Notes under the pieces: generated by a model
Database searches by the model: none
Told to the model about the DNA's origin: nothing
What the model saw: only the letters and a program-made list of their open reading frames with translations
Shown here: one piece after another, positions 2,516 through 63,169 of the stretch
How positions within the stretch are numbered: the first letter of the stretch is position 1
Layout: each line of letters opens with the position of its first letter
Made by a program: the position numbers and the translations under genes
Assembly (NCBI RefSeq): GCF_006345805.1
Contig: NC_042998.1
Coordinates: forward strand, 120,280,001-120,344,000
Reading direction: 5' to 3'
Length of the DNA stretch: 64,000 nucleotides
Source: Octopus sinensis
Lineage: Eukaryota

Positions 2516-2550
<35 letters not shown>

Positions 2551-2612
2551 CACACGCACACATGCATGTGCATACATGCACACATGCATGTGCGCATGCG
2601 TGCACACACAGT
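2485..2612. repeat. (CA)n plus mixed TG/CA alternating purine-pyrimidine tract
   Basis: Direct reading. Confidence 0.9.
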
Positions 2613-4437
2613 GAATTATCATTGTACTTTTAGTAACTTTGGAAATAAAAATTTAACATAATCCATCATGGCAATACAATGTACTGTTCCCCTTATTCCA
2701 GCAATTATTCCTATAGTATTTCTCTTGATTTTATTATTTTTTTTATTTAATTAAAAACATCCTGTCTTAGAAATTTATAATGAACATTAATACAGTAGAT
2801 TTACTCAATTCAGATGCTAGTGTACATCCTTTGCAACATACATGCACATGGTTTAAGTATTGAAGCATTTGTAAAGCATATTTAATATTTTGATTTGTTT
2901 ATGCACACAATATTTGCTTGTAGTCCTAGTATTGAATTGTTGAGGTTGAGTTTGCTACATTCTTGTGAAGCTTCCAGTGTTTTTGTTGTGTTTTGTTTTT
3001 TTGTTGATATTTGGAATTTTCTTTTTCATTAATCGTGAAGTGGTGCCTTCAGGTAAGACCTGGATATTTGCAACACCAGTCTGCTTGGCTGAGAAACCTA
3101 CACAGCTTTTAAGGGCTCAGAGTTTTATTGAATGACTTGATTGGAGCCTTTTTGCTAAAGATTTAAAAAATTCCTTCAGAGATATTGCTCCTTCTCTCAC
3201 TTTCCTTTTATTCAGATTGGAAAGTTAATTCTGGGACATATCTTGTTTTATGCTGAATTTGTTTGTTAGACACCTTAGTAACAAAAGAAAAAAAAAAAAG
3301 GAGAAAACCTAAAATGTTTTTGCTTGTGGATTCCAAATAGTCCAAAATTTCCACTATATATCTCATGGGATATTTATGTCAGTCTGTAGCTATCTACAAT
3401 TCTGATTTACTTATCCTCTTATAAAATAAAATTTTAAAATCAAACCAAATAATTCGGTTTGTATTTAACATCAAGCATGTTGGTTTGCAGAAGCCTCTAA
3501 TGCTGTAATTTGAAGTGAATTGCATTGCTAAATAATCCTGACATCTTCATACTTTCTTCTCTTCATTAAATAACTCCTGGCAAATAGGCTGACAATCTTT
3601 AAATACAAATAGTGTTTGGTAGTAAATCACCAGTCATATGTCACTTAGGTTTTTTTCCTCTTCTGTCTGTCTTTCCTTTTGTTTATGGTTCTATCCACAG
3701 TGTGTCACTGAGACTCAGTATTATATACCACTGCAAGTAACCAAGTGTTGTTAGAGAAGTTCATAGCTAGTTTTATTGTAGTCACTTTTAGTCCCCTAGA
3801 ATTATCCAGTAGCCTTTTTGTTGACTTCAGAAATATTTGTGGCAGAATACTACAGATTATGGTGTAGAGGAACTCCATACTGCATATATTAACTATATAT
3901 TTTCTTCATTTATAAAGCACAACTCCTCTATTGACATCAAATTTGAATATTATTTACTATATACAAAACCTCTTCTCATAAATATATTTACTGGAGGAAA
4001 TATATCCTATATAGTGCTCTGCCACAATTTGTTGGTAAAGAAGAAATTGATAATAGTACTGTATTTTTGTTTTTGTATATCTGATCACTATCTAGCATGA
4101 CAATAGTGTGTTCACCTAAAAAAAAAAGAATGTTCTTTCTGTTAGTCATTAGTCTATTATCTATGCTATTATCTAAATGATTACATTTTTTTTTATTGTT
4201 CATTTCTTTGAAAATCCTGTTCTTTCTCATAAACACTTTCAGACAGTTATTTACTATCCATTAATACATACACAGTCCTCATGCTACACTATATGCATCT
4301 TACCATTGTATTTGATGAATACATCTGACATTCATATATTTATGCATATATAATGCTCATTAACTAGATCTTGTCTTTCTATACATCTGCCACTCTATTA
4401 TGTACATGAGATAAATATTGAAACTTGAGCCAACAAA

Positions 4438-4616: not shown

Positions 4617-7600
4617 CTTGTGACTAGTTACATTAAATACAACTTGATACTCCATAAAGATCTTGTCACTATCTACTATGGTCTTACTGCAGTCAAATAT
4701 CAATGACTTAGTTTATACTATTGTCCTTTACATCCTCATAATAAACTTGTTTTGTCAGTCATGTTGATGTAGGCATCTATTATTATTGTTAGTTTTTAGA
4801 TTACCAGGCTTTCCATTACTGGAATATTAGAAATTTTAAGGTGTGCACAGTTGATTATACTGATACTCAAGACAAGACTGGTATTTTATTAACATTAAGA
4901 GCATAAAAGATAATGTCAGCCTTTGTGAGATTTGGACCTTGCACTTCTTCCTGTACAACATTCTTTTGGGGAAAGGTAATGAAGTTCGGACTTGTTGTGT
5001 AGCCCTTCTCAACTCTGCTTGAGCACTGCTATGGTGTTACAAATATAATTATTTGAGGGAGCAATCCAATATGCAGTGTCATAGTGAAGAGACACTGCTT
5101 CAGTTTTGCTGTGCAACCCATATCTCGGATGTAATCAAAACCTTTGATGGTGGCTGTAACCTGAGAAAGATAGTCTTTGTGTGTTTAGAGAATGGGATTG
5201 TTATGGATGGGATACTGTATAGTACAGAGTTATTAGCTTCTAATTTGTGAGCTTAAATTTTACAAATTTTAACCTTGTATTTAATTTCTGCTGGATTGAG
5301 CGGAATAAAGTATGTGTATGTATCATTTATTCAATGTGTTCTGGTCAATCAACTAAATACTTCGTTCTTTTTTAAAAACGAAACCTTGTGTCTAATTAAA
5401 AACAAATATTTAGACATTCTAATCTATGTAACTCTGTAGACATCAAAATCAGCATTTGTTTAAAACTGGTTGGTGTTTTGCTTGAATTTTTGTGCTTCTC
5501 AATGAAGATAAGGAAATATCCAAAATTACTTCAGAAGTTACTTAACATTTTTCCATAGTCATACCACAAGTCCAATAATAGACTGTGATGCACCAGTTTA
5601 ATTGTACACATTACTCAAATCAAAAGTAGTAAGTTTCACAGATTATTCAAATGAAGGTGTAAAATATTTCACTGAAAGACTAGTTATACTTGTTTGATAT
5701 TATGTCACAAAGGATTTGACCATTTAATTCTAGTTAAACATTTGCTAGTTAAATATGTTTAGTGCATTATAAGTAAGCATCAATAAAATTATTTAAGTGG
5801 TTACTAATTGTATTAAAAGAAATTTTCACTAGATTATTTAAAACAAATGGATCCATTAGTTGTTGCTATTTAGCCCCAGTTGACTGAGATGACTTATCAA
5901 CACATTACAACCATGAACCCATCTTTTTTAGGGCTATATAGGACTGCATATCCAAATAAGTTCTTTCCTTCCCCAAGATGATATGGTATGAGTTTCTTGA
6001 TGGGTATAGAATGAGGGCAATTTTCCTGCTATTTCCAACTAGTCAGTAACATCATAGAAGTTTCCCCCACTGGCTCAAGCAATCCATTTTTTCATTGTTT
6101 ACAATATTTTCCCTACTCTCAGTTGTACTTCATGTAAAATTTCTTAAGTTCTTTTTTTTTTAAACAAAAAAACTTGTATAGGGTCATCAGCAGTCAGTCT
6201 GTTAATGACCCATATGAACAGGGCAAATGTATCTAATCTAATTAGTTATATATAAGTTTATAGGATTTTAAGCAATTTTGCCATAACCTGTAACTCCATC
6301 CAATCTCTTTTTTGCATGTCCCTGAAGAATTTAAAATTCTGATTGTTAGTAGATTATTTTTGAAGATGTGAGTGGCTGTTAGACTATTTCTCTTGTTATC
6401 TTCCATCTGCATAACCTCACACCCATTACCTCTCTTCCATCTTTTTTTTTTTACCCTTTTATTAAACATATGCCAAATTTAATATTGGTCTCTGAATGCC
6501 ACTCCCTTTATTGCTGCTGTTGATGCTGCTGCTGCTACTATTACTGCTGCATTGCTTCTAACTGACTTCTATTTTTTTTCTGCATGGTAACAATTAATTA
6601 CTTATTAGAATATCAAGTTTGCATAAGCTTGTCTTGAATTCATCATCATGAGTAAGCCCATCAGATTTAAGTACTGTTTGGTCCCTAATACAAATTGTTG
6701 TTATTGTTATTATAAGAAGGAATTGTTTAAACAGAACTCAACAGGATAAAAGGAAAGCCCCTAAATTACATATTTGGAATATTCTAAAATGAAAATAGTT
6801 TAAAATTGTAATTTTAATTTTTAAAAATTACATCAAAAGATATATTGCTATGACTCAAATGTGATCTTCCAAAATTCCTCCATTTTCTGTTATTTCCTTA
6901 GGAAAAGGTAGGATAATGTTAAACATATTTTGGTGTATATTATTGTTATTATTATTATTTGAAATATTTTCAAATATTTGAATGCTCCATTACTTTTGAT
7001 ATTGAAATTAATAATAACCAGAGCTTTATTATTCAGCTCTGGTGAATTTGGTGTGAAATAAAAAAATTTTGGGGACCATGTAATTTATAGAGACACTAAT
7101 CATAATAGCTGGAGATGCCATCTAGGAGGCAGGTCCCATTTAGAAAATATTTCAAATTCATAGGCTTTGATGAAATCTCCAGAAATCTCTAACTATGAAA
7201 TATTATTTTAAGTGTAGTGTTGCAATCTCTACCTAAAGAAGTACTGTGTAATACAATTGCTGAAGTGAACATGGATTGATATTGGAAATACATTACAAAT
7301 TTAGAATTAATTTTGTTATATATATTTTGAACATAAAATGTGAAACTAACATCTCTGTGAAACATATTTCAAACAAAATCCATATATATATATATATATT
7401 TTTATTCTGATGGGCTGTTATATAATTGTCCTTAATAGTAAGCAATTCAGTCTCAGTTCATTTGTGTTTGTACATATATGTTAATTTTGAAAATTTTGTA
7501 AATAGTTGAGTTTGTCTTGCCATTTCACCTCTCATCTCAATTTAATGTTGGCACACATACACATAGAAATACATACACAAACATTAATTCTGTTTTGAAT

Positions 7601-13020: not shown

Positions 13021-13749
13021 TGCCAGCATAGGAAAAGGACATTTGGTGATGATGATGATACTGAACATTCAAAACTGTTAATGAAATTCAAGTAGAATTG
13101 CTAACAGTATTGTTAGATAGCCTTTTGGGAAAGGACTTTAACAGTTCCTTTACCACATGGAAGATACATTGGTATTGTTGTGTACATTTCCAAGAGGACT
13201 ATTTTGAAGGAGTTGGTCCCCAAATCATCATCATTAATCTACATCTCCTCCTCTCCCCACTCCTTCATGCCCAGTTTTTCCGTGCTTGCATGGTTTGGAA
13301 GGGTTTCCTTCATGATCAGCCTTCTGCACTTTTGCTGTCTTCCACTGGTTCTTTCCACATGACTCTCCTGTCACTTCTTCACCTACTTGTTACCATTCAA
13401 ATAAAAATAATGTAGGAAACATGCTATTTATTAGAATAATGGTGCAAATTCTTTGTAGGTTTGCTAAGAACTTTCTGATATCACCATATATGTATGCATT
13501 CATATCGATGATATCAATCTTATATGTTGGTGTGGTATAATTTGTTGCTCACGACCTGGGTTTTATCTACCTGTAGTGATATTCACTGTATTGCAAGTAT
13601 TAGGACCAGGTTTTGACACACTACTTGCTACTGCAGAAACCCAGGAGGTATGGTCTCTCCTTTATTTTCTTGCAGCAATATTTGAGGCTCTGCAAAATGT
13701 TATGAACTCTGTTCTTCCTTTCCTGATGAAGCCATGAATATATATATAT

Positions 13750-13790
13750 ATGTGTGTGTGTGTGTTGTGTGTGTGTGTGTGTGTGTGTGT
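13750..13790. repeat. (TG)n microsatellite
   Basis: Direct reading. Confidence 0.95.
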
Positions 13791-14305: not shown

Positions 14306-14330
14306 ATAAATCCTTTTTTCTATCTTCCAG

Positions 14331-14432
14331 GTTCTAGCTCATCAACGTCATTTAGAACATCTGTGGCATAACAAGAAAGTGAAGTTGCACCAGAGGTTAG
14401 GTTTGCGCTTGTTTCAGCAAGATGTCAAACAG
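14331..14432 (+). CDS. trio: Trio exon 4 (102 nt, phase 0-0)
   Basis: tatcttccag|GTT ... CAG|gtacag. VLAHQRHLEHLWHNKKVKLHQRLGLRLFQQDVKQ resembles Trio VLHHQRQLENIWQHRKVRLHQRLQLCVFQQDVQQ. Confidence 0.95.
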
Positions 14433-14507
14433 GTACAGTTGTTTTTACTGCAGCTGCATTTCTTCTGACTTATATATTTTAGGAGAGAGAGACAAATGAC
14501 CAATATA

Positions 14508-15034: not shown

Positions 15035-15575
15035 GTAAGTTAAGTTTTAATTTTTACTCACAATGAAAACATATACATGTGTACATGTGCGCACACATGC
15101 ACACACACATACAGATACATGTTTCATTTAATATACGCAGTATTTAAATATGAGTTACTAATAGTTTCATGCAGTGGAAACACTATAATTCACCAGATTT
15201 ATATATCATGCCTCGTGTCTCCAAATAATGTGTCTATTAAGTGATATGTATCTCTCACTGGCTGGAATACTTTTTTGTTGATCTTACTAATAACACCATT
15301 GTAAATGACATATATGCATAAATGAACAAACCTACCAATCATTGTCAAAATGTCTTGTTGTTAATTAAATTGTAATTCGACCAATAAGTTCATTGTTTAA
15401 GAGGAAAATGTTTTCTTTTTTCAGTATTTACATCTACACAATATATTGGTTAATTTTCACTGGAGATGTATTTAATACCAGACTGGATTTGAACTAAAAA
15501 CCTATATTTTTAAACTAAGGATAATAACCTATGTGTCATTTGTGTAGGGAAAATGATTATGACTACCCTTAGGTT

Positions 15576-17874: not shown

Positions 17875-18297
17875 AAGGTGTGGCTATGTCGTTAAGAAGG
17901 TTGCTTTCTGACCAGAAGGTTTCAGGTTTACTCTGCTATGTGGTACCTTGGATTAGCATCTTTTACTATTGCTGTGGGTTGACCAAAGTCTGGTGATTGG
18001 ATTTGGTAGATGGAAACTAAAAGAAGCATGTTGTCTATATGTGTGTGCATGCATATATGTGTATCTCTTTGTTTTGACATCACATGATAGTTGTAAATTA
18101 TAGTCGCTGTCATACAAGCAGAGTAATTTATTTCTAATGTTCTGCAAGAACATGTCTGATCATAAGGAAATATTATCTTGCTTGGAAACAGGTGAAGGTT
18201 GGTGACAGAAAGGCATCTGGGTGTATAAAATCTGTTGCAATAAACTCTGATCTCATGCAAGCAAGGAAAAATGGACATTAAATGATGATGATAATGA
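17875..18297 (+). mobile_element. tRNA-derived SINE with RTE-like 3' tail (family E)
   Basis: Head related to the SINE at 18617, central (TG/TA) tract, tail ...ggacattaaatgatgatgat. A second copy lies at 19787-20190. Confidence 0.85.
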
Positions 18298-18616: not shown

Positions 18617-19007
18617 GGCGCAGGAGTGGCTGTGTGGTAAGTAGCTTGCTTACCAACCACATGGTTCTGGGTTCATTCCCACTGTGTGGCACCTTGGGCC
18701 TCACTATTATAGCCTCAGGCCAACCAAAGCCTTGTGAGTGGATTTGGGAGATGGAAACTGAAAGAAGCCTGTCGTATATATGTGTATATATATGTTTGTG
18801 TGTCTGTGTTTATCTCCCCAACATCGCTTGACAACCGATGGTGGTGTGTTTACGTCCCCGTAACTTAGCGGTTTGGCAAAAGAGACTGATAGAATAAGTA
18901 CTAGGCTTCCAAAGAATAAGTCCTGGGGTCGATTTGCTTGACTGAAGGTGGTGCTCCAGCATGGCCGCAGTCAAATGACTGAAACAAGTAAAAGAGTAAA
19001 GAGAGTA
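18617..19007 (+). mobile_element. Full-length tRNA-derived SINE family A
   Basis: GGCGCAGGAGTGGCTGTGTGGTAAG head with A/B-box-like motifs, internal (TA/TG) tract and (AAAGAGTA)n tail. Close to the minus copy at 30370-31148. Confidence 0.92.
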
Positions 19008-19786: not shown

Positions 19787-20190
19787 AGCACAGCTATGGT
19801 TGTGTGATTGAGAAGCTTGCTTCCTAGCCATGTGATCGTGGTTCAATACCACTGCATAGCACTTTAGGCGAGTGCCTTTTCCTATAGCCCTAGATTGATC
19901 AAAACCTGAGGATAAATTGGGTGACCAAAAGAAGCCCATCGTGTGTGTTTGCATGTGTGTATCTTTGTCGTGACATCATTGAATAATTGTAAATGAGCAT
20001 CATCATCATGCAAGTGATGTTGTTTGTTTCAGTTTTCCATGAAAAATATGTCTAGATATGAGAAAATATTACCCTTAAGCAAACTAAGGTTGGCTACAGG
20101 AAAGTCATCTGGCTGTAGAAAACCTGTCTCAACAAGTTCTGCCTGACCTATACAAGCATGAAAAATTGGATGTTAAATGATGAGGATGAG
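19787..20190 (+). mobile_element. SINE family E copy
   Basis: Collinear with 17875-18297. Confidence 0.85.

Positions 20191-25433: not shown

Positions 25434-25435
<2 letters not shown>

Positions 25436-25502
<67 letters not shown>
25436..25502. repeat. (TA)n microsatellite
   Basis: Direct reading. Confidence 0.95.
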
Positions 25503-25507
<5 letters not shown>

Positions 25508-26371: not shown

Positions 26372-28362
26372 TGAGCAAACGCCCCCCCATCCATTGGACG
26401 GTTTGTATAGGTGAAGAGGGTTAACTTGGATGGTGTTAAGTTGTGGAGATGTTTGGTGATTGTATGGGGTTGTTACTTTTGGTTAGGGCATTAAAGATTC
26501 CTGAGATGTTAAAACTGTTGACTGTTTCTTCTAAATAAGGAAGATTAATTGATAGTGAATCTTAACACAGTGAACCTTTTCAAAATTGTCATGAAGCCAA
26601 TAAAATGAAGGGAAGCTGTTCAGCCCACAATATATACAACTTCCAGTGGAATCACACATCATAATTAACCTTAAACTTTTTGCACTCAAATGCTTTCACA
26701 TTAGGATAAGCACAATGTATTCTTCCATAGTACATACTTCATGTTGACACCTATACGTCAGACTGAATGCTGCTTTATCTCCAAAGTGACTATTGCAAGT
26801 GATATTTAAGCAATAAACAGTTCTATGGCTTTCGCATTTGACAACTGTTGCTTTATATATTTTATTTCGATTTTCACTGGCGTAGTGGTAAGAACTACGG
26901 GGTAAGTAACATTAGTTTCGAATAAAAATATAAATGGAAGTTTTAATCACCGGATGGACAGGCAAACAGAAACTGCTGCTCAATAAAGGCACAAAACTGC
27001 TTAGGGAAGTCTCTCTTCTCTCAAAAGTTGACACAAAAAGAGATGAAACTTGGGGGTGAAGTAACACAATGTGCAATAAAATAACATAAGGCATGTTTCT
27101 TTGCAAATCAATTTTATCTAAAAAATTGAACAATACCGCTTATTTTTTAAAGTTGGATGAGAAACATTAGGCAAGATTTTAGATGTAACCCCCCAAATTT
27201 TTCATGTTTTATAAGTAGTCAATTAGTCTTTTCTACTTTCAATTGAATTTTGTTGAGAATATCTTCAGAAAATTCAGTAATCACCAGTTATTTATTTGCT
27301 TTATTTTCAAGTTACTGCCTTTTCCTAGTAGTTTTTCATGTCATCTGGTTTATTGCGCGAAAAACAGCCGCAAGAACACATTTCACTGCAAATGCATGTG
27401 GTTGATTACAGTTAATTAAAGTTAGAGTGATATTCATTTTTTTAGCCGCTTACAAACATGTGAAAATGCAGAAATGAAAACAGTTGTTCTTGGTCTAATA
27501 TTTAAATCAAAATGAGACTTACAAATAGTGAGCTTTATTTACATATATCTGTCATTTAAATGTGAAATCGTAGAAATGAATTGTTTAGAACGTTGGTTAA
27601 TGATCATGATGATGGAAGAAACAGGACAAAAAGGAATGTAAACAGTTCGAATGGCAGGAAGGCAATCTATATGTTAAATTGATGTGGGCAAGTGGAAGGC
27701 TATCCAATAAAAATCAAAAATGGTCAGTTTCAAACTAGGGCGTTTTTGGAAGAGTAAGTAATCACAGAAAAGACTAACCTTAAAGGGCTTTCAACTCCAT
27801 GGAAATAACTATTGGAGGGCTGCCTTGTAAACCACATTCCTTGTCAATCCTCTGAGAGCATAGTAAAATAGATTGGCTGAGTTTCCAACTCTCGAACAGT
27901 CTACATACAGTTGCCTGTGTGAAAAACATGGAGTGCTGAAGTCCAGCCCAACCACTTTGAGTGACTGCTCCCAGGCTTTGTTGATGGTCATGGCAAAGCT
28001 TAGTCATACGGGAAACTGTGCACTGATATTTAAACAATTAACAATTCTTTGGCTTTTGCATTTGACAACTGTTACTTTAAGTATTTTATTTTGATTTTCA
28101 CTGATGTAGTGGTAAGAACAAGGGGATAAGTATCAGTAGTTTCAAATAATAATAAAAATGGAAGTTTTAATCATCTGATAGACAGGCAAACATTACAAAA
28201 GTAGTGATTCTCACTTGGAAAGTGACAATTTTGAAGATCTTTTTAGATTACAGAATGTCCCGCTCTCTCGTATCCATGTTTAAAATTTCAGTACAATTGG
28301 ATGAACAATACTTGAGTTATAAGCACATAAAAAAACTGACAGAGTGGGATTTATATATATAT
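26372..28362 (-). mobile_element. Composite non-autonomous Helitron relic with a RepHel (PIF1 helicase) C-terminal fragment
   Basis: 27809-28020 minus reads [44 protein letters not shown]...[11 protein letters not shown] (PIF1 helicase terminal motifs). CTAG|T end at 27735-27738. A second 3'-like end has a hairpin at 26387-26401. Outer boundaries are inferred. Confidence 0.75.
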
Positions 28363-28388
28363 ACACACACACACACGCATGCATACAC

Positions 28389-28419
<31 letters not shown>

Positions 28420-28425
28420 TTTCTT

Positions 28426-28583
28426 GGTGCAGGCATGGCTGTGTGGTAAGAAGCTTGCTTCCCAATCACATGGTTCTAGGTTGAGTCCCACTGCATTTGG
28501 GTAAGTGTCTTCTTTTATAGCCTCAAGCCAACCAAGGCCCTGAGAGTGGATTTGGTAGATGGAAACTGAGAGAAGCCCATTGC

Positions 28584-28614
<31 letters not shown>

Positions 28615-30569: not shown

Positions 30570-30604
<35 letters not shown>

Positions 30605-31148
30605 CATATATATATAAGGGTAAAGACCCCCTTCGGTCATGAATGACCATGGGATTGCACCTAGAAAGTTACCCTCCTAGACACAAGTCCGGGCAAGGTT
30701 GTTTATGGAAGACCAGCAGTCGCCCATGCATACCAGCCTCCCCTCTCCACACCACCAGTGTTATCCAAGGGAAAGACAAAGGTCAATACAGCTTGGCACC
30801 AGTGACGTCGCAACTCATTTCTACAGCTGAGTGAACTGGAGCAACGTGAAATAAAGTGCCTTGCTCAAGAACACAACACGCAGCCCGGTCCGTGATTCGA
30901 GCTCACAACCTCACGATCGTAAGCTCGACGCTCTAACCACTGAGCCATGTGCCTATATATATACACACATATATACACATATATACGACAGACTTCTTTC
31001 AGTTTCCGTCTACCAAATCCACTCACAAGGCATTGGTCGGCCCGAGGCTATAGCAGAAGACACTTGCCCAAGATGCCATGCAGTGGGACTGAACCCGGAA
31101 CCATGTGGTTGGTAAGCAAGCTACTTACCACACAGCCACTCCTGCGCC
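30370..31148 (-). mobile_element. SINE family A interrupted by a family B SINE
   Basis: Head GGCGCAGG ends at 31148 and the tail is at about 30370. The two halves are split at the internal (TA)n tract. Confidence 0.92.
30616..30954 (-). mobile_element. tRNA-derived SINE family B with a CORE-like central domain, nested in (TA)n
   Basis: Minus strand reads GGCACATGGCTCAGTGGTTAGAGCG...GTGTTCTTGAGCAAGGCACTT...CAGCTGTAGAAATG. TA repeats on both sides; related + copy at 56358-56680. Confidence 0.88.
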
Positions 31149-32648
31149 AGCTTTTTTTACCAGCTTTAACTTCTAAGTTTAAATTCCACAGAGGTTGACT
31201 TTGCCTTTCATCTTTGCTGGGTTGATAAAATATGTACCAGTCAAGAACTACAGTCAATATAATCAACTAGCCCCCTCCCCCAAAATTTCTAGCCTTGTGC
31301 CTATAGAAGAAAAGATTTTATAGCATGTACTGTGATTAGTGAAGCATTATTATACTGTGATGTATTAACCAACTTGTTGCTTTATACATTACTATAAAAT
31401 GTTTCACCAACCACATCACATCCCTGTATAATAATGTTTCACCAACCGCAATACATGACTATAATAATGTCTCACTAACCACAGTACAGCACTGTATAAT
31501 AATGTTCCATGCACTACATATTCCCTGTTTCTCTAGGCACAGTTACTCCATTGATTTAACTCTATTTCTCCTGACCTTGTACACTGGGGTATTTACGAAA
31601 GTAGATAGACCATGTTTACAGGAATAGATAGACCTTGTGTACAATAATACTCACTGGAGTAATATGACATTGTCTATAGGATCAGTGAAGATATAAGTAA
31701 TTTGAATGTTTACAAAGTATTAATTACTACAGTATTGTGTTGATCATCTTTTACATGAGACTTCTTGAGCCTTCATCATTGCTGTTGGATAGGGCTTAAT
31801 ATAAAACTTCTGATAATTCCCTTATCTTCCCTTCTTTCCCCACTTTCTCCTTACTGCAGTAGCAGCTGCTGCTGCTACTACTGGTGCAGTCAGTGTATGA
31901 CAACATTATCTCTGTCTATAGGACAATGGACCCACCAATTAATGTTGAGTGTGTAAAGTCAGGGAGGGAACAAGGGGAAGGGGAGAAGATAGTAGATTGA
32001 TATCTAAAGAGTCTGTCAGGCAATACCAGGGACTACATTCTAGCATCGGATCACATCCATAGTTGATTTTCTTCCTGTCTCTATCATGCATCCACATGCA
32101 ACTATTATAAGCCTAAATATCTGCTATGCAGTATTTTGGGATCTTTCTAGGCATGATTTGCTGCAGTTATTTTACTAGATTTCAATTCCAAGATTTATTT
32201 TACTGTTCAAGGAAAATTTACTGCAACATGGACTGTATGTAAAAAAAATATTTAAAACTGTAGTATTCTAAAGATAAAGGAATGAAGTTGGGCAGTAATG
32301 TAATACTTGTACAAGGAGCAACAGGAGGAGATCCTGCCTCAGACAACTTACTGTTCTATGCATTGGTAAGAAAATGCTCTGCTATAGACAGTCCTTATGT
32401 TGGAGAAAACAGGTATTTTCTTCTTTTTGGAATTTTGATACATTAGATAAGCCTATTCTAAAGGTTTATTCTTTAAAATTAGTCAACTGTTGTAATTGTG
32501 AAGTAAATATCACCTTAAAATCTTTTAAGTGTATGTGTATATACACACACACACGATTTTCTTCTCATACTTATGTAGATAAACATACAGAAAGTTTGAT
32601 TCATTACTGTTAACATACTCATTTAATCAACATACATGATTGTACATA

Positions 32649-32649
<1 letters not shown>

Positions 32650-32688
<39 letters not shown>

Positions 32689-32765
32689 CATATGTGCACG
32701 TATGCATATTTACATACATATGTGCATGCATGCATATTTACACACACACACACACACACACACAA
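32650..32765. repeat. (TG)n ... (CA)n compound tract, self-complementary
   Basis: (TG)n at about 32650-32690 and (CA)n at about 32740-32765. Confidence 0.9.
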
Positions 32766-52595: not shown

Positions 52596-52787
52596 AACAC
52601 AATAACAAATGCTGATAAACTACTAGCTGCTGCTGATGAACTTGCTCAAACTGGTGAATGTGATCCCAAGGAAATATACAGTGAAGCCCAGGAACTTGAA
52701 GAGCGCATGCATGATTTCATCACTGCTCTAGAAAGGAGAAGGGCTATACTTGATATGACTGTCTCATTTTATACACATGTTCATGAG
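52596..52787 (+). CDS. trio: Trio exon 6 (192 nt, phase 0-0)
   Basis: gatttcag|AAC ... GAG|gtaaat. NTITNADKLLAAADELAQTGECDPKEIYSEAQELEERMHDFITALERRRAILDMTVSFYTHVHE contains the near-invariant Trio/Kalirin motif NADKLL..A..LAQTGECDP.EIY. Confidence 0.96.
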
Positions 52788-56680: not shown

Positions 56681-57610
56681 TTTTTTTTTTATAGTGATTT
56701 GGAAATCTCTTGCCAACCCACTGACACATTTTCTTGGCTTCTTACAAATAAATACTGGCTACATTCTTTCGATAGTGTTGGTAGTTAGTCTTGAGAATGT
56801 CATACAGATCTAGAAATAAAACCCAGTGAATCATGTTACCAACATGTCAGTCAGTTAGAGGTGGTGATGTTATAATTAAGTGTATTGACATTTACTTTCC
56901 TTCTCCACCTTAATGAAAGCTGTCTTTTTAAAATGCTCATTATGATTTCATTTACTTCAGATTACTAAAGTCTGTTAAATAATTATGGCTCTACCTTCTT
57001 TCATCACAGAGAAAATAGGTATGAAGTACAAGTCTAAATGTGACCACCTTCTTATCTGATTGGTGTTGTTAACTACAGGTGATCAAATAGCAATTTAACT
57101 TAATTGACTTCAGTTATGTTCATTGTACATGTTATTACACAAAGAAGCTTTTACCTTGCAACCTGGGCCAGTCCTGCTGTAAAATACACAAGGAAATATT
57201 GAGTTTATTGATTCTTCTGTACAACTGCGGTTGGCTGTAATGTTTATGGAAACATGGCTAATAGGTAGCTGTTCTTAAATGTCAATTACCATTGTGGAAA
57301 GTTTGCATCTAAGTATATGGCCCTGAATTTGTGTGTGTGTGCGAGAGAGAGATTATATAGGTAGGGTAAAGTCCAAACTGTATCCTCTTGAAGCACATCT
57401 GCTTATTCCAGTATTGTAGTCCAGTATGTATTAATGTGAAGAATTTCTAATAGGAAGTTTCTTGTTTATCCAACATTTACAAATTTGTGATTCCTAGATT
57501 CCTATTAGCAAATGAAACTTGTGTAATGGTGAATAAGTAATGTCAAAAACTTTTCCATCTTCCTGTTTTGTTTTATATATATATATATATAGATAGCATT
57601 TTTTCAATGG

Positions 57611-57679
57611 CCTGATAACTGAAGAGATGGCGGCGTGGGTTTCTGCTCCGACATCTGAAACTTGGAGTTTTATCATGGC
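57611..57679 (+). ncRNA. Type I hammerhead-ribozyme-like motif (possibly attenuated), within a (TA)n-flanked segment of about 180 bp that may be a Penelope-like relic
   Basis: CTGAAGA core at 57619-57625 and GAAAC at 57657-57661. Three stems pair by inspection (see finding). Penelope origin is inferred. Confidence 0.6.

Positions 57680-57779: not shown

Positions 57780-57836
<57 letters not shown>
57780..57836. repeat. (TA)n microsatellite
   Basis: Direct reading. Confidence 0.95.
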
Positions 57837-58091: not shown

Positions 58092-58261
58092 TTAACATCT
58101 TGGCTAGAAGAATTGCAACAAGAACTGCAAAGTTCAGAAATAGCTGATACAGTGGAAGGAGCAGAGCACTTAGTAACACAGTTCAATGATCAAAGGGAGA
58201 CAACTATTGAAGCAGCTATTAGTACGGTCAGAGAAGGAGAAAGTTTACTTGAACGGATAAG
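58092..58261 (+). CDS. trio: Trio exon 7 (170 nt, phase 0-2); the gene continues beyond the window
   Basis: ctattttag|TTA ... AG|gtaagc. LTSWLEELQQELQSSEIADTVEGAEHLVTQFNDQRETTIEAAISTVREGESLLERI(R) resembles Trio [28 protein letters not shown]...IKEGEDLIQQLR. Confidence 0.93.
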
Positions 58262-58747: not shown

Positions 58748-58783
<36 letters not shown>

Positions 58784-61934: not shown

Positions 61935-63169
61935 TGAGAGATGTTCATTAAAGATATCCCCTGATCCACTTCCCAAGGACTGGGATAAACAAAGCTTGGC
62001 ATAATTATTTGTCCTTCTCTACATAGCCACCAACAATGGTGCCACACTTCTCCCATCACTTTATGCAGCTGTGAAGACCTCGTCTGTAGAAATTGGTAGG
62101 TTGGGCCTGGAGCCAAGACATCACCTTAGAAATAAGTTCATCCTCATCCAAAAAGTGCTTCCTCTTCAAAAATGACTTCATGGTTGGAAAGAGGTGGAAG
62201 TCAGATGATGCAAGGTCAGGACGAAGGATTTCATAGCTGCAGGAGTCTGCTTTCATCTGGGCAACATGTGCATTGTGAACTGGGGCGTTGTCTTGGAAGA
62301 GGCAGACTCCTTTGCTCAGCATGCCACTCCTCTCTGCTTTGATGGCATCCCACAATCTCTGCAGCAGAGAAGCATAATATGCCCTGTTAATTGTGGTGTC
62401 CTTTGCCAGAAAATCCATCCTCACTGCTCCATGCTGATCCCAAAAGACAGCATCACCTTGCCTGCTGAGAGTTGGACATGAGCCTTCTTTGGAGTTATGC
62501 TTATATTCAAGTGGACTTTAGTCTTAGGATCATAGTGATGGACCCATGCCAAAAAAGTCCTCATTTTCTTGGCACATTGCCAAAAGAGCCTGGGAGTAAT
62601 TGACGTGTTCCTGCTTCTGAAAAGGTGTGAGCATCTAGGGAATCTATCATTCACACAGCTTCCACATGTGCAAATGGTTGTGAATGATTTTTTTCCACAG
62701 ACCCTACACTTATCTTCGCTTCTTGGGCTAGTTGCAGAATAGTTATGCAGCGATCCTCCAAAGTTGCAGCTTCTACTTTATGGATGGTGTCGTCATAAAT
62801 GGTGGAATGTGGTTGTCCAAGAATAGGAGCAGTTTTCACCTAAGTCCAACCACATTTGAACTGGCAATGTCAGTGCTTGACTACATCGTATGATGGTGCA
62901 TCATCACCAAAAGCTTCTTTCATCTCATCAAAAGTCTCTTTTGGTGTATGCCCTTTCAAGTATAAGAACCTGATCACTGATCTGCATTCAACTTACTCCA
63001 TTGTAACACATTAGTCCACTTCAGTAACCATAAAAGACAAACGAATACTAGTGGAAAGCTGCAATTTACAATGTGACATGTAGAGACAAGTACACTTATA
63101 CCTACACAAGTTCCGTTTCCTGCAATAACTGGAAGTGGATCAGGGGAAATCTTAAATGAACACCCATCA
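61935..63169 (-). mobile_element. Near full-length defective mariner element (about 1.24 kb)
   Basis: TIRs of about 39 bp (TGAGAGATGTTCATTAAAGATATCCCCTGATCCACTTCC vs TGATGGGTGTTCATTTAAGATTTCCCCTGATCCACTTCC); TA at 63170-63171. Fragments WVHHYDPKTK, FQDNAPVH and RPDLASSDFHLF (DD34D-family motifs); frameshifted. Confidence 0.93.

What the first reader, a model, noticed from the sequence alone, without database searches (positions are those of the whole stretch)
57611..57679. Hammerhead-ribozyme-like fold on the sense strand of a Trio intron, about 410 nt upstream of exon 7
Seen: stem I TGATAA(57613-18)/TTATCA(57670-75), extendable by GCC/GGC past a bulged T. Core CTGAAGA(57619-25). Stem II GATG/CATC plus CGG/CCG and a possible inner helix (57626-55). 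Then T-GAAAC(57656-61), a short stem III ACT/AGT with a TGG loop, and cleavage triplet GTT (57667-69). This is type I topology. Known: minimal type I hammerheads with a short stem III occur in Penelope-like retroelements and retrozymes, and intronic hammerheads occur in some animal genes. Inference: because it is transcribed in sense, it could cut Trio pre-mRNA co-transcriptionally, perhaps as a dimer, and so affect splicing or output. Deviations that may inactivate it: an extra U before GAAA (could pair with A9) and U at position 17.
Basis: partly seen in the sequence, partly recalled or inferred. Interest (0 to 1): 0.75.

Follow-up and report, generated by a model that had tools for sequence, protein, structure and literature searches.

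The report
Orphan hammerhead-like motif in intron
A 70-base stretch in an intron of a Trio/kalirin-like gene does carry every signature base of a hammerhead self-cutting RNA, far better than chance would give. It has one extra base in the catalytic core, a weak third helix and a more stable competing fold, so it is most likely a crippled stray copy of a retroelement-type ribozyme, not a regulator of the gene.

Summary
The described motif is at the stated coordinates. It has type I order, a 6+3 bp helix I, CUGAAGA, a long helix II closed by G10.1-C11.1, GAAA, a 3-bp helix III and U17. It lies on the sense strand of a ~5.3 kb intron, 413 nt upstream of a spectrin-repeat exon.

It is not a routine chance match. 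Shuffle, hallmark-pair and energy tests give about 6e-7 expected per 64-kb window. None of 3,774 decoy cores scanned on the real window came close.

Nothing supports activity or function:
- No Rfam hammerhead model matches, even at E<=10 on 83 nt.
- A U sits between C11.1 and G12, a position where I found no natural precedent.
- Helix III alone is unstable (+2.1 kcal/mol).
- A rod-like hairpin that pairs C3, U4 and A6-A9 is 4.8 kcal/mol better.
- There is no second copy in the window for a dimer.
- I found no family copies anywhere I could search.
- Nothing resembles it in the orthologous introns of the available relatives, which are distant.

Best reading: a solitary, probably crippled hammerhead-lineage copy of Penelope/retrozyme type, lying between two (TA)n tracts. 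Cleavage of Trio pre-mRNA is unproven and unlikely to matter. U17 is allowed by the consensus.

The parts
57610..57618 (+). Helix I, 5' arm: GCC extension (57610-12) plus TGATAA (57613-18)
   Evidence: All nine pairs are Watson-Crick, with pairing probability 0.22-1.0.
57619..57625 (+). Core box C3 U4 G5 A6 A7 G8 A9 (CTGAAGA)
   Evidence: It is one of 33 CTGANGA sites in the window and the only one with all three helices.
57626..57655 (+). Helix II stem-loop, 30 nt: GATG/CATC closed by G10.1-C11.1, a 1x1 G/A internal loop, CGG/CCG, a weak GUGG/CUGC helix and a 4-nt loop
   Evidence: pairing probability 0.98-1.0.
57656..57656 (+). Extra U between C11.1 and G12, the core defect; pairs with A9 in the minimum-energy fold
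   Evidence: a hit only with insertion class c. The papers I read report no natural insertion at this position.
57657..57660 (+). Core box G12 A13 A14 A15.1 (GAAA)
57660..57668 (+). Helix III: A15.1-U16.1, C15.2-G16.2, U-A, with a UGG loop
   Evidence: The hairpin alone is +2.1 kcal/mol. Pairing probability is about 0.05.
57669..57669 (+). U17; the predicted cleavage site would lie between 57669 and 57670
   Evidence: H17 may be A, C or U.
57670..57679 (+). Helix I, 3' arm: TTATCA (57670-75), bulged T57676, GGC (57677-79)
57574..57591 (.). (TA)9 microsatellite directly left of the ~190-nt segment that holds the motif
57781..57836 (.). (TA)28 microsatellite directly right of that segment
   Evidence: Only 0.6% of the window lies between two (TA)n tracts less than 250 bp apart.
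52596..52784 (+). Upstream spectrin-repeat exon of the Trio/kalirin-like gene (approximate ends); left boundary of the host intron
   Evidence: tblastn, 83% identity to the neighbouring exon of L007.
58092..58261 (+). Downstream spectrin-repeat exon, with AG at 58090-91 and GT at 58262-63; 413 nt after the motif

Best explanation
This is a solitary sequence of hammerhead-ribozyme lineage. It is most likely a stray, decayed copy of the type I hammerhead carried by animal retroelements (Penelope-like elements or their non-autonomous retrozymes). It sits within a ~190-nt segment bracketed by two (TA)n tracts, inside a ~5.3 kb intron of a Trio/kalirin-like gene, in sense orientation.

It is transcribed as part of the pre-mRNA. 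There it is predicted to fold mainly as a rod-like hairpin in which C3, U4 and A6-A9 are base-paired. Four things count against monomer cleavage: the inserted U between C11.1 and G12, the unstable 3-bp helix III, the lack of a nearby partner copy, and U17, which I recall as the least favourable of the allowed bases. It therefore probably cleaves not at all or only very slowly, and is removed with the intron without affecting Trio output.

Shown: the anatomy, its improbability by chance, the strand and intron position, the competing fold, and the failure of the Rfam models. Inferred: the retroelement origin and the loss of activity.
For: - All 13 conserved core bases are in type I order, and all three core-adjacent pairs are formed.
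- Two hallmarks not used in my descriptor are present: G10.1-C11.1 and C15.2-G16.2. Each occurs in 7.5% of chance stems.
- Helix I is exactly 6 bp and helix II exactly 4 bp before the first interruption, as in canonical metazoan type I hammerheads (Cervera & de la Pena 2014).
- Chance expectation is about 6e-7 per window. No decoy core on the real sequence comes near.
- Long, bulged helix II and small helix III are traits reported for Penelope-element hammerheads.
- The segment lies between (TA)9 and (TA)28. (TA)n is a preferred target of Neptune/Naiad-type Penelope-like elements, which are reported in cephalopods as old remnants (PMC8557442).
- Evidence for crippling: the core insertion; the hammerhead-compatible fold at -20.1 against a -24.9 kcal/mol rod fold, a fraction of about 8e-5; helix III at +2.1 kcal/mol; no second copy in 64 kb. 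Metazoan type I motifs with an unstable helix III need a second copy to cleave.
- Mutant hammerheads inside repeats are a known by-product of hammerhead searches (Perreault 2011).
Against: - I found no family copy: not in the window, in about 43 kb of related loci, in JGI metagenome contigs, or through ORF handles in the protein collections. The source genome itself could not be searched, so this is weak.
- The window holds no reverse transcriptase or GIY-YIG reading frame and no tandem repeat.
- The 189-nt segment is not notably self-paired (z = -1.8).
- Two published Penelope-hammerhead traits are missing or only approximate. The bulged base is on the 3' side of helix II, not the 5' side, and helix III/loop 3 is only quasi-palindromic.
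- (TA)n tracts are common here (10 in 64 kb), and at least one follows a SINE copy. The flanks are therefore circumstantial.
- Thermodynamic prediction ignores tertiary contacts, so inactivity is not shown.
Confidence: 0.5

Rival explanations
1. It is an active intronic hammerhead. Despite the extra U, the RNA self-cleaves after U57669 during transcription, alone or as a dimer, and so cuts the Trio pre-mRNA intron. This may modulate splicing or output.
For: - The conserved core is complete, with correct core-adjacent pairs, G10.1-C11.1 and sense orientation.
- A bulge on the opposite strand at the same helix II/core junction, between A9 and G10.1, is tolerated and even typical in natural hammerheads.
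- Other core insertions (A6a, U13a) retain some activity.
- U17 is allowed.
- The predicted homodimer forms an extended helix III and is 7.4 kcal/mol better than two monomers.
- Conserved intronic hammerheads exist in amniotes.
Against: - No Rfam hammerhead hit, even at E<=10.
- I found no natural precedent for an insertion between C11.1 and G12. G12 is the general base, from my knowledge of the crystal structures.
- The hammerhead-compatible fold is about 1e-4 of the ensemble.
- Helix III is unstable and there is no partner copy in 64 kb. A dimer advantage of 7.4 kcal/mol corresponds to micromolar affinity, which is implausible for a single-copy nuclear pre-mRNA (inference).
- No motif is present in the orthologous introns of the available relatives.
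- From memory, ribozyme cleavage inside an intron need not disturb splicing (exon tethering, Dye et al. 2006). Even activity would therefore not imply regulation.
Confidence: 0.15
2. It is a chance look-alike: an ordinary intronic hairpin that happens to carry CUGANGA and GAAA in the right places, with no hammerhead ancestry.
For: - The hammerhead consensus is short, and matches are expected by chance in large databases (Perreault 2011).
- Hairpins this stable occur at about 26 loci in this window.
- There is no covariance-model support, no family copies and no conservation.
- A core defect is what chance matches usually show: 33 of 37 shuffle hits carried an insertion.
- My thresholds were set after seeing the candidate.
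Against: - The joint expectation is about 6e-7 per window, or about 0.02 for a genome of some 40,000 such windows.
- None of 3,774 decoy cores on the real sequence gave a hit better than -11.5 kcal/mol, against -19.9 for the candidate.
- It has G10.1-C11.1, C15.2-G16.2 and the 6 bp/4 bp helix geometry. These are independent hammerhead hallmarks.
Confidence: 0.2
3. The functional unit is the rod-like hairpin itself, for example an intronic pre-miRNA-like precursor, and the hammerhead resemblance is incidental.
For: - A 75-nt hairpin with about 28 pairs: -24.9 kcal/mol, z = -2.86 on the plus strand against -16.5 and z = -2.19 on the minus strand.
- It is on the sense strand of an intron.
Against: - No Rfam miRNA or other family matches at E<=10.
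- Comparable hairpins are common in the window.
- The apical loop has only 4 nt.
- No similarity in the orthologous introns of relatives.
- This reading does not explain the complete hammerhead core.
Confidence: 0.05

Closest known systems
Hammerheads of Penelope-like retroelements (min-HHRs and variants; Cervera & de la Pena 2014)
   Same: Type I topology, a long and sometimes bulged helix II, G10.1-C11.1, a very small helix III, one unpaired base at the helix II/core junction, mostly solitary dispersed copies, and low or no monomer activity. The host elements favour (TA)n targets.
   Different: The unpaired base here is 3' of helix II (between 11.1 and 12), not 5' (between 9 and 10.1). Helix I is 6+3 bp, not 4-5 bp. 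Helix III is 3 bp with a non-palindromic 3-nt loop. No pLTR, reverse transcriptase or GIY-YIG context and no family copies were found.
Non-LTR retrozymes of animals (tandem 170-400 nt repeats with type I hammerheads; de la Pena lab 2020; 2026 preprint)
   Same: A type I hammerhead with 6-bp helix I and 4-bp first segment of helix II. The ~190-nt unit size fits the range. A rod-like alternative fold is present. Many copies of such elements lie in introns.
   Different: There is no tandem repeat, and only one copy in 64 kb. The 189-nt segment as a whole is not strongly self-paired. The core carries an insertion.
Conserved intronic hammerheads of amniotes (HH9 in RECK, HH10; Rfam RF02275/RF02277)
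   Same: A sense-strand type I hammerhead inside an intron of a protein-coding gene.
   Different: Those are ultraconserved across species, match covariance models and cleave in vitro. This motif matches no model and has no counterpart in the available orthologous introns.
Canonical type I hammerhead family, Rfam Hammerhead_1 (RF00163); 235 matches reported in the giant squid genome
   Same: The same core bases and helix order. Cephalopod genomes do contain members.
   Different: The candidate scores below about 11 bits, against a gathering score several times higher. It has a 30-nt helix II, an inserted U and no recognisable loop 1/loop 2 contact motif.

Membership tests
Hammerhead ribozyme (any type) | Conserved core bases C3 U4 G5 A6 N7 G8 A9, G12 A13 A14, A15.1-U16.1 and H17, all present and in order | tested here: met
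   Consensus as stated by Perreault 2011.
Hammerhead ribozyme (any type) | Core not interrupted by insertions or substitutions (any core mutation disqualifies in curated searches) | tested here: not met
   U57656 lies between C11.1 and G12. Criterion.
Hammerhead ribozyme (any type) | Three helices with standard pairs directly adjacent to the core (1.1-2.1, 10.1-11.1, 15.1-16.1) | tested here: met
   U-A, G-C and A-U.
Hammerhead ribozyme (any type) | Match to an Rfam hammerhead covariance model at gathering score | tested here: not met
   No match at gathering score or at E<=10 on 201 nt and 83 nt.
Hammerhead ribozyme (any type) | The hammerhead secondary structure is the favoured, or a well-populated, fold | tested here: not met
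   -20.1 against -24.9 kcal/mol, fraction about 8e-5, helix III probability 0.05. Tertiary contacts are not modelled.
Hammerhead ribozyme (any type) | Site-specific self-cleavage 3' of position 17 | not testable with these tools
   Needs an in vitro transcription or cleavage assay.
Penelope-like-element hammerheads / metazoan type I family | Many related copies in the genome that form consensus families with compensatory changes | tested here: inconclusive
   No copy in the window, related loci, JGI metagenomes or protein collections. The source genome was not available.
Penelope-like-element hammerheads / metazoan type I family | [quoted passage not shown] | tested here: not met
   A9 is followed directly by G10.1. 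The unpaired base is on the other strand. Feature.
Penelope-like-element hammerheads / metazoan type I family | Conserved G10.1-C11.1 pair | tested here: met
   G57626-C57655. It occurs in 7.5% of chance stems.
Penelope-like-element hammerheads / metazoan type I family | Palindromic 15.2-16.2 and loop 3 that allow a dimeric extended helix III | tested here: inconclusive
   ACUUGGAGU pairs with itself at 8 of 9 positions, including two G-U pairs, with a central G/G mismatch. The dimer minimum-energy fold uses it. Any hairpin can dimerise in this way.
Penelope-like-element hammerheads / metazoan type I family | Location in a pLTR flanking a reverse transcriptase/GIY-YIG reading frame | tested here: not met
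   No such reading frame among the 5 ORFs of at least 110 aa. A 5'-truncated solo fragment cannot be excluded.
Non-LTR retrozyme | Head-to-tail tandem repeats of 170-400 nt, each with a type I hammerhead | tested here: not met
   Single copy. No repeat of the 180-nt segment in the window.
Conserved intronic hammerhead (HH9/HH10 type) | Conservation at the orthologous intron position across species | tested here: inconclusive
   No motif and no alignable intron sequence upstream of the orthologous exon in L001-L007 and L014. Those exons are only 68-82% identical at the DNA level, so the species are too distant to judge.
Animal pre-miRNA | Stable hairpin of about 60-80 nt with a match to a known family or conservation | tested here: not met
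   The hairpin is present. There is no Rfam match, no conservation, and about 26 equally stable hairpins in the window.

The most novel reading that the evidence does not exclude
The motif is a working, lineage-specific intronic hammerhead of a new core variant. It would tolerate a bulged U between C11.1 and G12, the mirror image of the well-known 9/10.1 bulge. It would cut the Trio pre-mRNA co-transcriptionally, with the rod-like fold acting as an off state.
Probability: 0.1. Interest if true: 0.6.

Novelty: already known. Interest (0 to 1): 0.3.

Why it matters
If the best reading holds, this is one more stray, mutated retroelement-type hammerhead in an animal intron. That is a documented and common situation, with no consequence for Trio.

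It would matter only if the RNA cleaves. Activity would show that the hammerhead core tolerates an insertion next to the general base G12. It would also give an invertebrate example of a ribozyme inside a neuronal signalling gene. A one-day transcription assay settles this, so the motif is cheap to test but not a priority.

Tried and rejected
- Rfam at gathering score on the whole window, and at E<=10 on 201 nt and 83 nt, gave no hammerhead and no miRNA. The only hits were noise: SNORD116 at 16 bits and CRISPR-DR24 at 12 bits.
- BLAST of the 180-nt segment against the window gave only low-complexity hits.
- I fetched eight loci holding the orthologous exon through exon-ORF homologues. Their introns do not align, and they hold no hammerhead descriptor hit and no Rfam hit.
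- An exact look-up of the window's exon ORF found nothing on record. Cluster look-ups gave no organism names.
- I used reading frames across the motif as handles to find copies in the protein collections. A 43-aa minus-frame peptide found no candidate. A 30-aa plus-frame peptide found 0 hits among 1.84 billion representatives. A first attempt failed on a stop codon.
- A pattern scan of JGI metagenome contigs returned six unrelated chance matches.
- A tRNA-derived SINE head was rejected: ARAGORN found nothing, and there is no similarity to the SINE family present in the window.
- A retrozyme-like rod for the whole 189-nt segment was rejected: z is only -1.8.
- A second descriptor hit at 27196-27268 (minus strand) is AT-rich, has short stems, and fits the 0.14 expected by chance.
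- I tried re-registering helix II to move the extra base to the usual 9/10.1 position. The pairs do not form (reading).
- The supplement with Penelope-like-element consensus sequences is not held.

Full report
**Observation.**
- Helix I is TGATAA 57613-18 / TTATCA 57670-75. It extends by GCC 57610-12 / GGC 57677-79 past a bulged T57676.
- The core box is CTGAAGA, 57619-25.
- Helix II is 30 nt (57626-55). It is closed by GATG/CATC and continues through CGG/CCG and a weak inner helix.
- An extra T sits at 57656, followed by GAAA at 57657-60.
- Helix III is ACT/AGT with a TGG loop (57660-68). T17 is at 57669.

This is type I order. A descriptor I wrote independently finds this locus as the only strict hit on either strand of the window.

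**Gene context.** The exon at 58092-58261 has AG and GT at its borders and reads as a spectrin repeat. Twelve homologous exon fragments exist in public assemblies, and JGI names one of them 'triple functional domain protein/kalirin'. The neighbouring exons of one such locus map to the plus strand of the window at 14328-14435 and 52596-52784. The motif therefore lies on the sense strand of a ~5.3 kb intron, 413 nt upstream of the next exon. I could not verify the exon number or the organism.

**Is it more than chance?** Yes, by every test I could run.
- A descriptor with helix I >=5, II >=4 and III >=3 bp, allowing one junction insertion at any of four places, gives 37 hits in 2,500 dinucleotide shuffles of the window, about 0.015 per window. 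The perfect class gives 4 and the observed class 7.
- The candidate is far better than that minimum. Synthetic chance hits built from a Markov model of the window reach its hammerhead-constrained energy (-19.9 kcal/mol) in only 0.17% of cases.
- It also has two hallmarks the descriptor did not ask for. G10.1-C11.1 and C15.2-G16.2 each occur in 7.5% of chance stems. Given those pairs, 0.75% of chance hits reach the energy.
- The product is about 6e-7 per 64-kb window, or about 0.02 for a genome of 40,000 such windows.
- As a control that keeps the real sequence, I scanned the window with 3,780 permuted decoy cores. The 23 hits at other loci are no better than -11.5 kcal/mol.
- Helix I is exactly 6 bp and helix II exactly 4 bp before the first interruption, which is the canonical metazoan type I geometry.

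The thresholds were set at the observed values after the fact and the nulls are simple. I keep 0.2 for it because all independent support is missing.

**What is missing.**
- No Rfam family matches at gathering score. No hammerhead family appears at E<=10 when only 201 or 83 bases are searched, so every hammerhead model scores below roughly 11 bits. Genuine cephalopod type I hammerheads are found by the Rfam model; 235 were reported in the giant squid.
- The 180-nt segment has no other copy in the window, and there is no tandem repeat.
- Eight loci with the orthologous exon from other species were recovered. The exon is 68-82% identical at the DNA level, but the introns do not align. None holds a hammerhead descriptor hit or an Rfam hit. 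These species are too distant to test conservation properly.
- Searches for copies through reading-frame handles and a pattern scan of JGI metagenomes found nothing related.
- The source genome was not available, so the decisive test for family copies could not be run.

**Would it work?** Four things count against monomer activity.
1. The U between C11.1 and G12 interrupts the core. The natural insertions described in the papers I read lie between A9 and G10.1, after A6, after A13, or near C3. I found none at this position, and curated searches reject any core change.
2. Helix III is 3 bp with a 3-nt loop. It is +2.1 kcal/mol on its own and has about 5% pairing probability. Metazoan type I motifs with such helices need a second copy to form a dimer, and none lies within 64 kb. 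The predicted homodimer is 7.4 kcal/mol better than two monomers. That is micromolar-range affinity, and any hairpin can dimerise in this way.
3. The minimum-energy fold is a rod-like hairpin (-24.9 kcal/mol, z = -2.86). In it A9 pairs with the extra U, A6-G8 pair with CUU, and A2.1-C3-U4 pair with the 3' arm of helix III. The hammerhead-compatible fold is -20.1 kcal/mol, about 8e-5 of the ensemble.
4. U17 is allowed (H17 is A, C or U). From memory, it is the rarest and slowest of the three.

Prediction ignores tertiary contacts, so inactivity is inferred, not shown.

**Origin.** Several traits point to the Penelope-like-element and retrozyme world: the long, bulged helix II, the tiny helix III, one unpaired base at the helix II junction, and solitary occurrence. 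The unpaired base is on the opposite strand from the published pattern, however, and loop 3 is only quasi-palindromic.

The motif sits in a ~190-nt segment bracketed by (TA)9 and (TA)28. Only 0.6% of the window lies in such an interval. (TA)n is a preferred target of Neptune/Naiad-type Penelope-like elements. These are present in cephalopods as old remnants, and some carry non-canonical hammerhead cores. This is circumstantial, because (TA)n tracts are frequent here and one follows a SINE copy. No reverse transcriptase frame is nearby, and the 189-nt segment is not rod-like as a whole.

**Verdict.**
- Most likely (0.5): a solitary, crippled hammerhead-lineage copy of retroelement type, spliced out with the intron.
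- Chance look-alike: 0.2.
- Some real self-cleavage: 0.15. Regulation of Trio is less likely still. From memory, ribozyme cleavage within introns can leave splicing intact (exon tethering).
- A different hairpin function such as a pre-miRNA: 0.05. About 26 equally stable hairpins occur in the window, and no family match or conservation supports it.

Degenerate hammerhead copies in animal repeats and introns are well documented, so the finding is ordinary unless the cleavage assay says otherwise.

Noticed in passing
window 28420-28584 (+), 30993-31149 (-), 18617-18769 (+); fragments at 17982-18027 and 19796-19857: A ~160-nt repeat family with tRNA-like box A and box B sequences (GGCTGTGTGGTAAGAAGC ... 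GGTTCTAGGTTGAGTCCC). Copies are 81-83% identical, and one is followed by a (TA)n tail. It looks like a tRNA-derived SINE. From memory it resembles the abundant octopus SINE, which would fit a cephalopod origin. It is unrelated to the hammerhead-like segment. ARAGORN calls no tRNA in the window.
   Followed up: partly
window 62056-62424 (-): A 122-aa reading frame with a weak match to the mariner-type transposase DDE domain (Pfam Transposase_1, 20.3 bits, below the 24-bit cut-off). It is probably a decayed mariner/Tc1 transposon in the next intron.
   Followed up: partly
window 27196-27268 (-): A second, much weaker type I hammerhead descriptor hit: CTGAAGA ... GAAA, helices of 4, 4 and 2 bp, no insertion. 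It is AT-rich and within the 0.14 hits expected by chance at that stringency.
   Followed up: yes
window 2546-2620 (-), 32661-32735 (+), 30896-30970 (-), 15056-15130 (-): Near-perfect hairpins or inverted repeats of 15-22 bp (-31 to -39.5 kcal/mol in 75 nt). They are much stronger than the hairpin under study. Their nature (foldback elements, MITE ends) was not examined.
   Followed up: no
window 7383-7398, 13739-13750, 25435-25503, 28352-28363, 28585-28610, 30583-30604, 57574-57591, 57781-57836, 58752-58779: Ten (TA)n tracts of at least 6 units in 64 kb. Two pairs lie about 200 bp apart and bracket unique segments: one holds a SINE copy, the other the hammerhead-like motif.
   Followed up: partly
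window 14328-14435 and 52596-52784 (+): Two further spectrin-repeat exons of the same Trio/kalirin-like gene, separated by introns of about 38 kb and 5.3 kb. In the related JGI locus L007 the same exons are only about 300-950 nt apart.
   Followed up: partly
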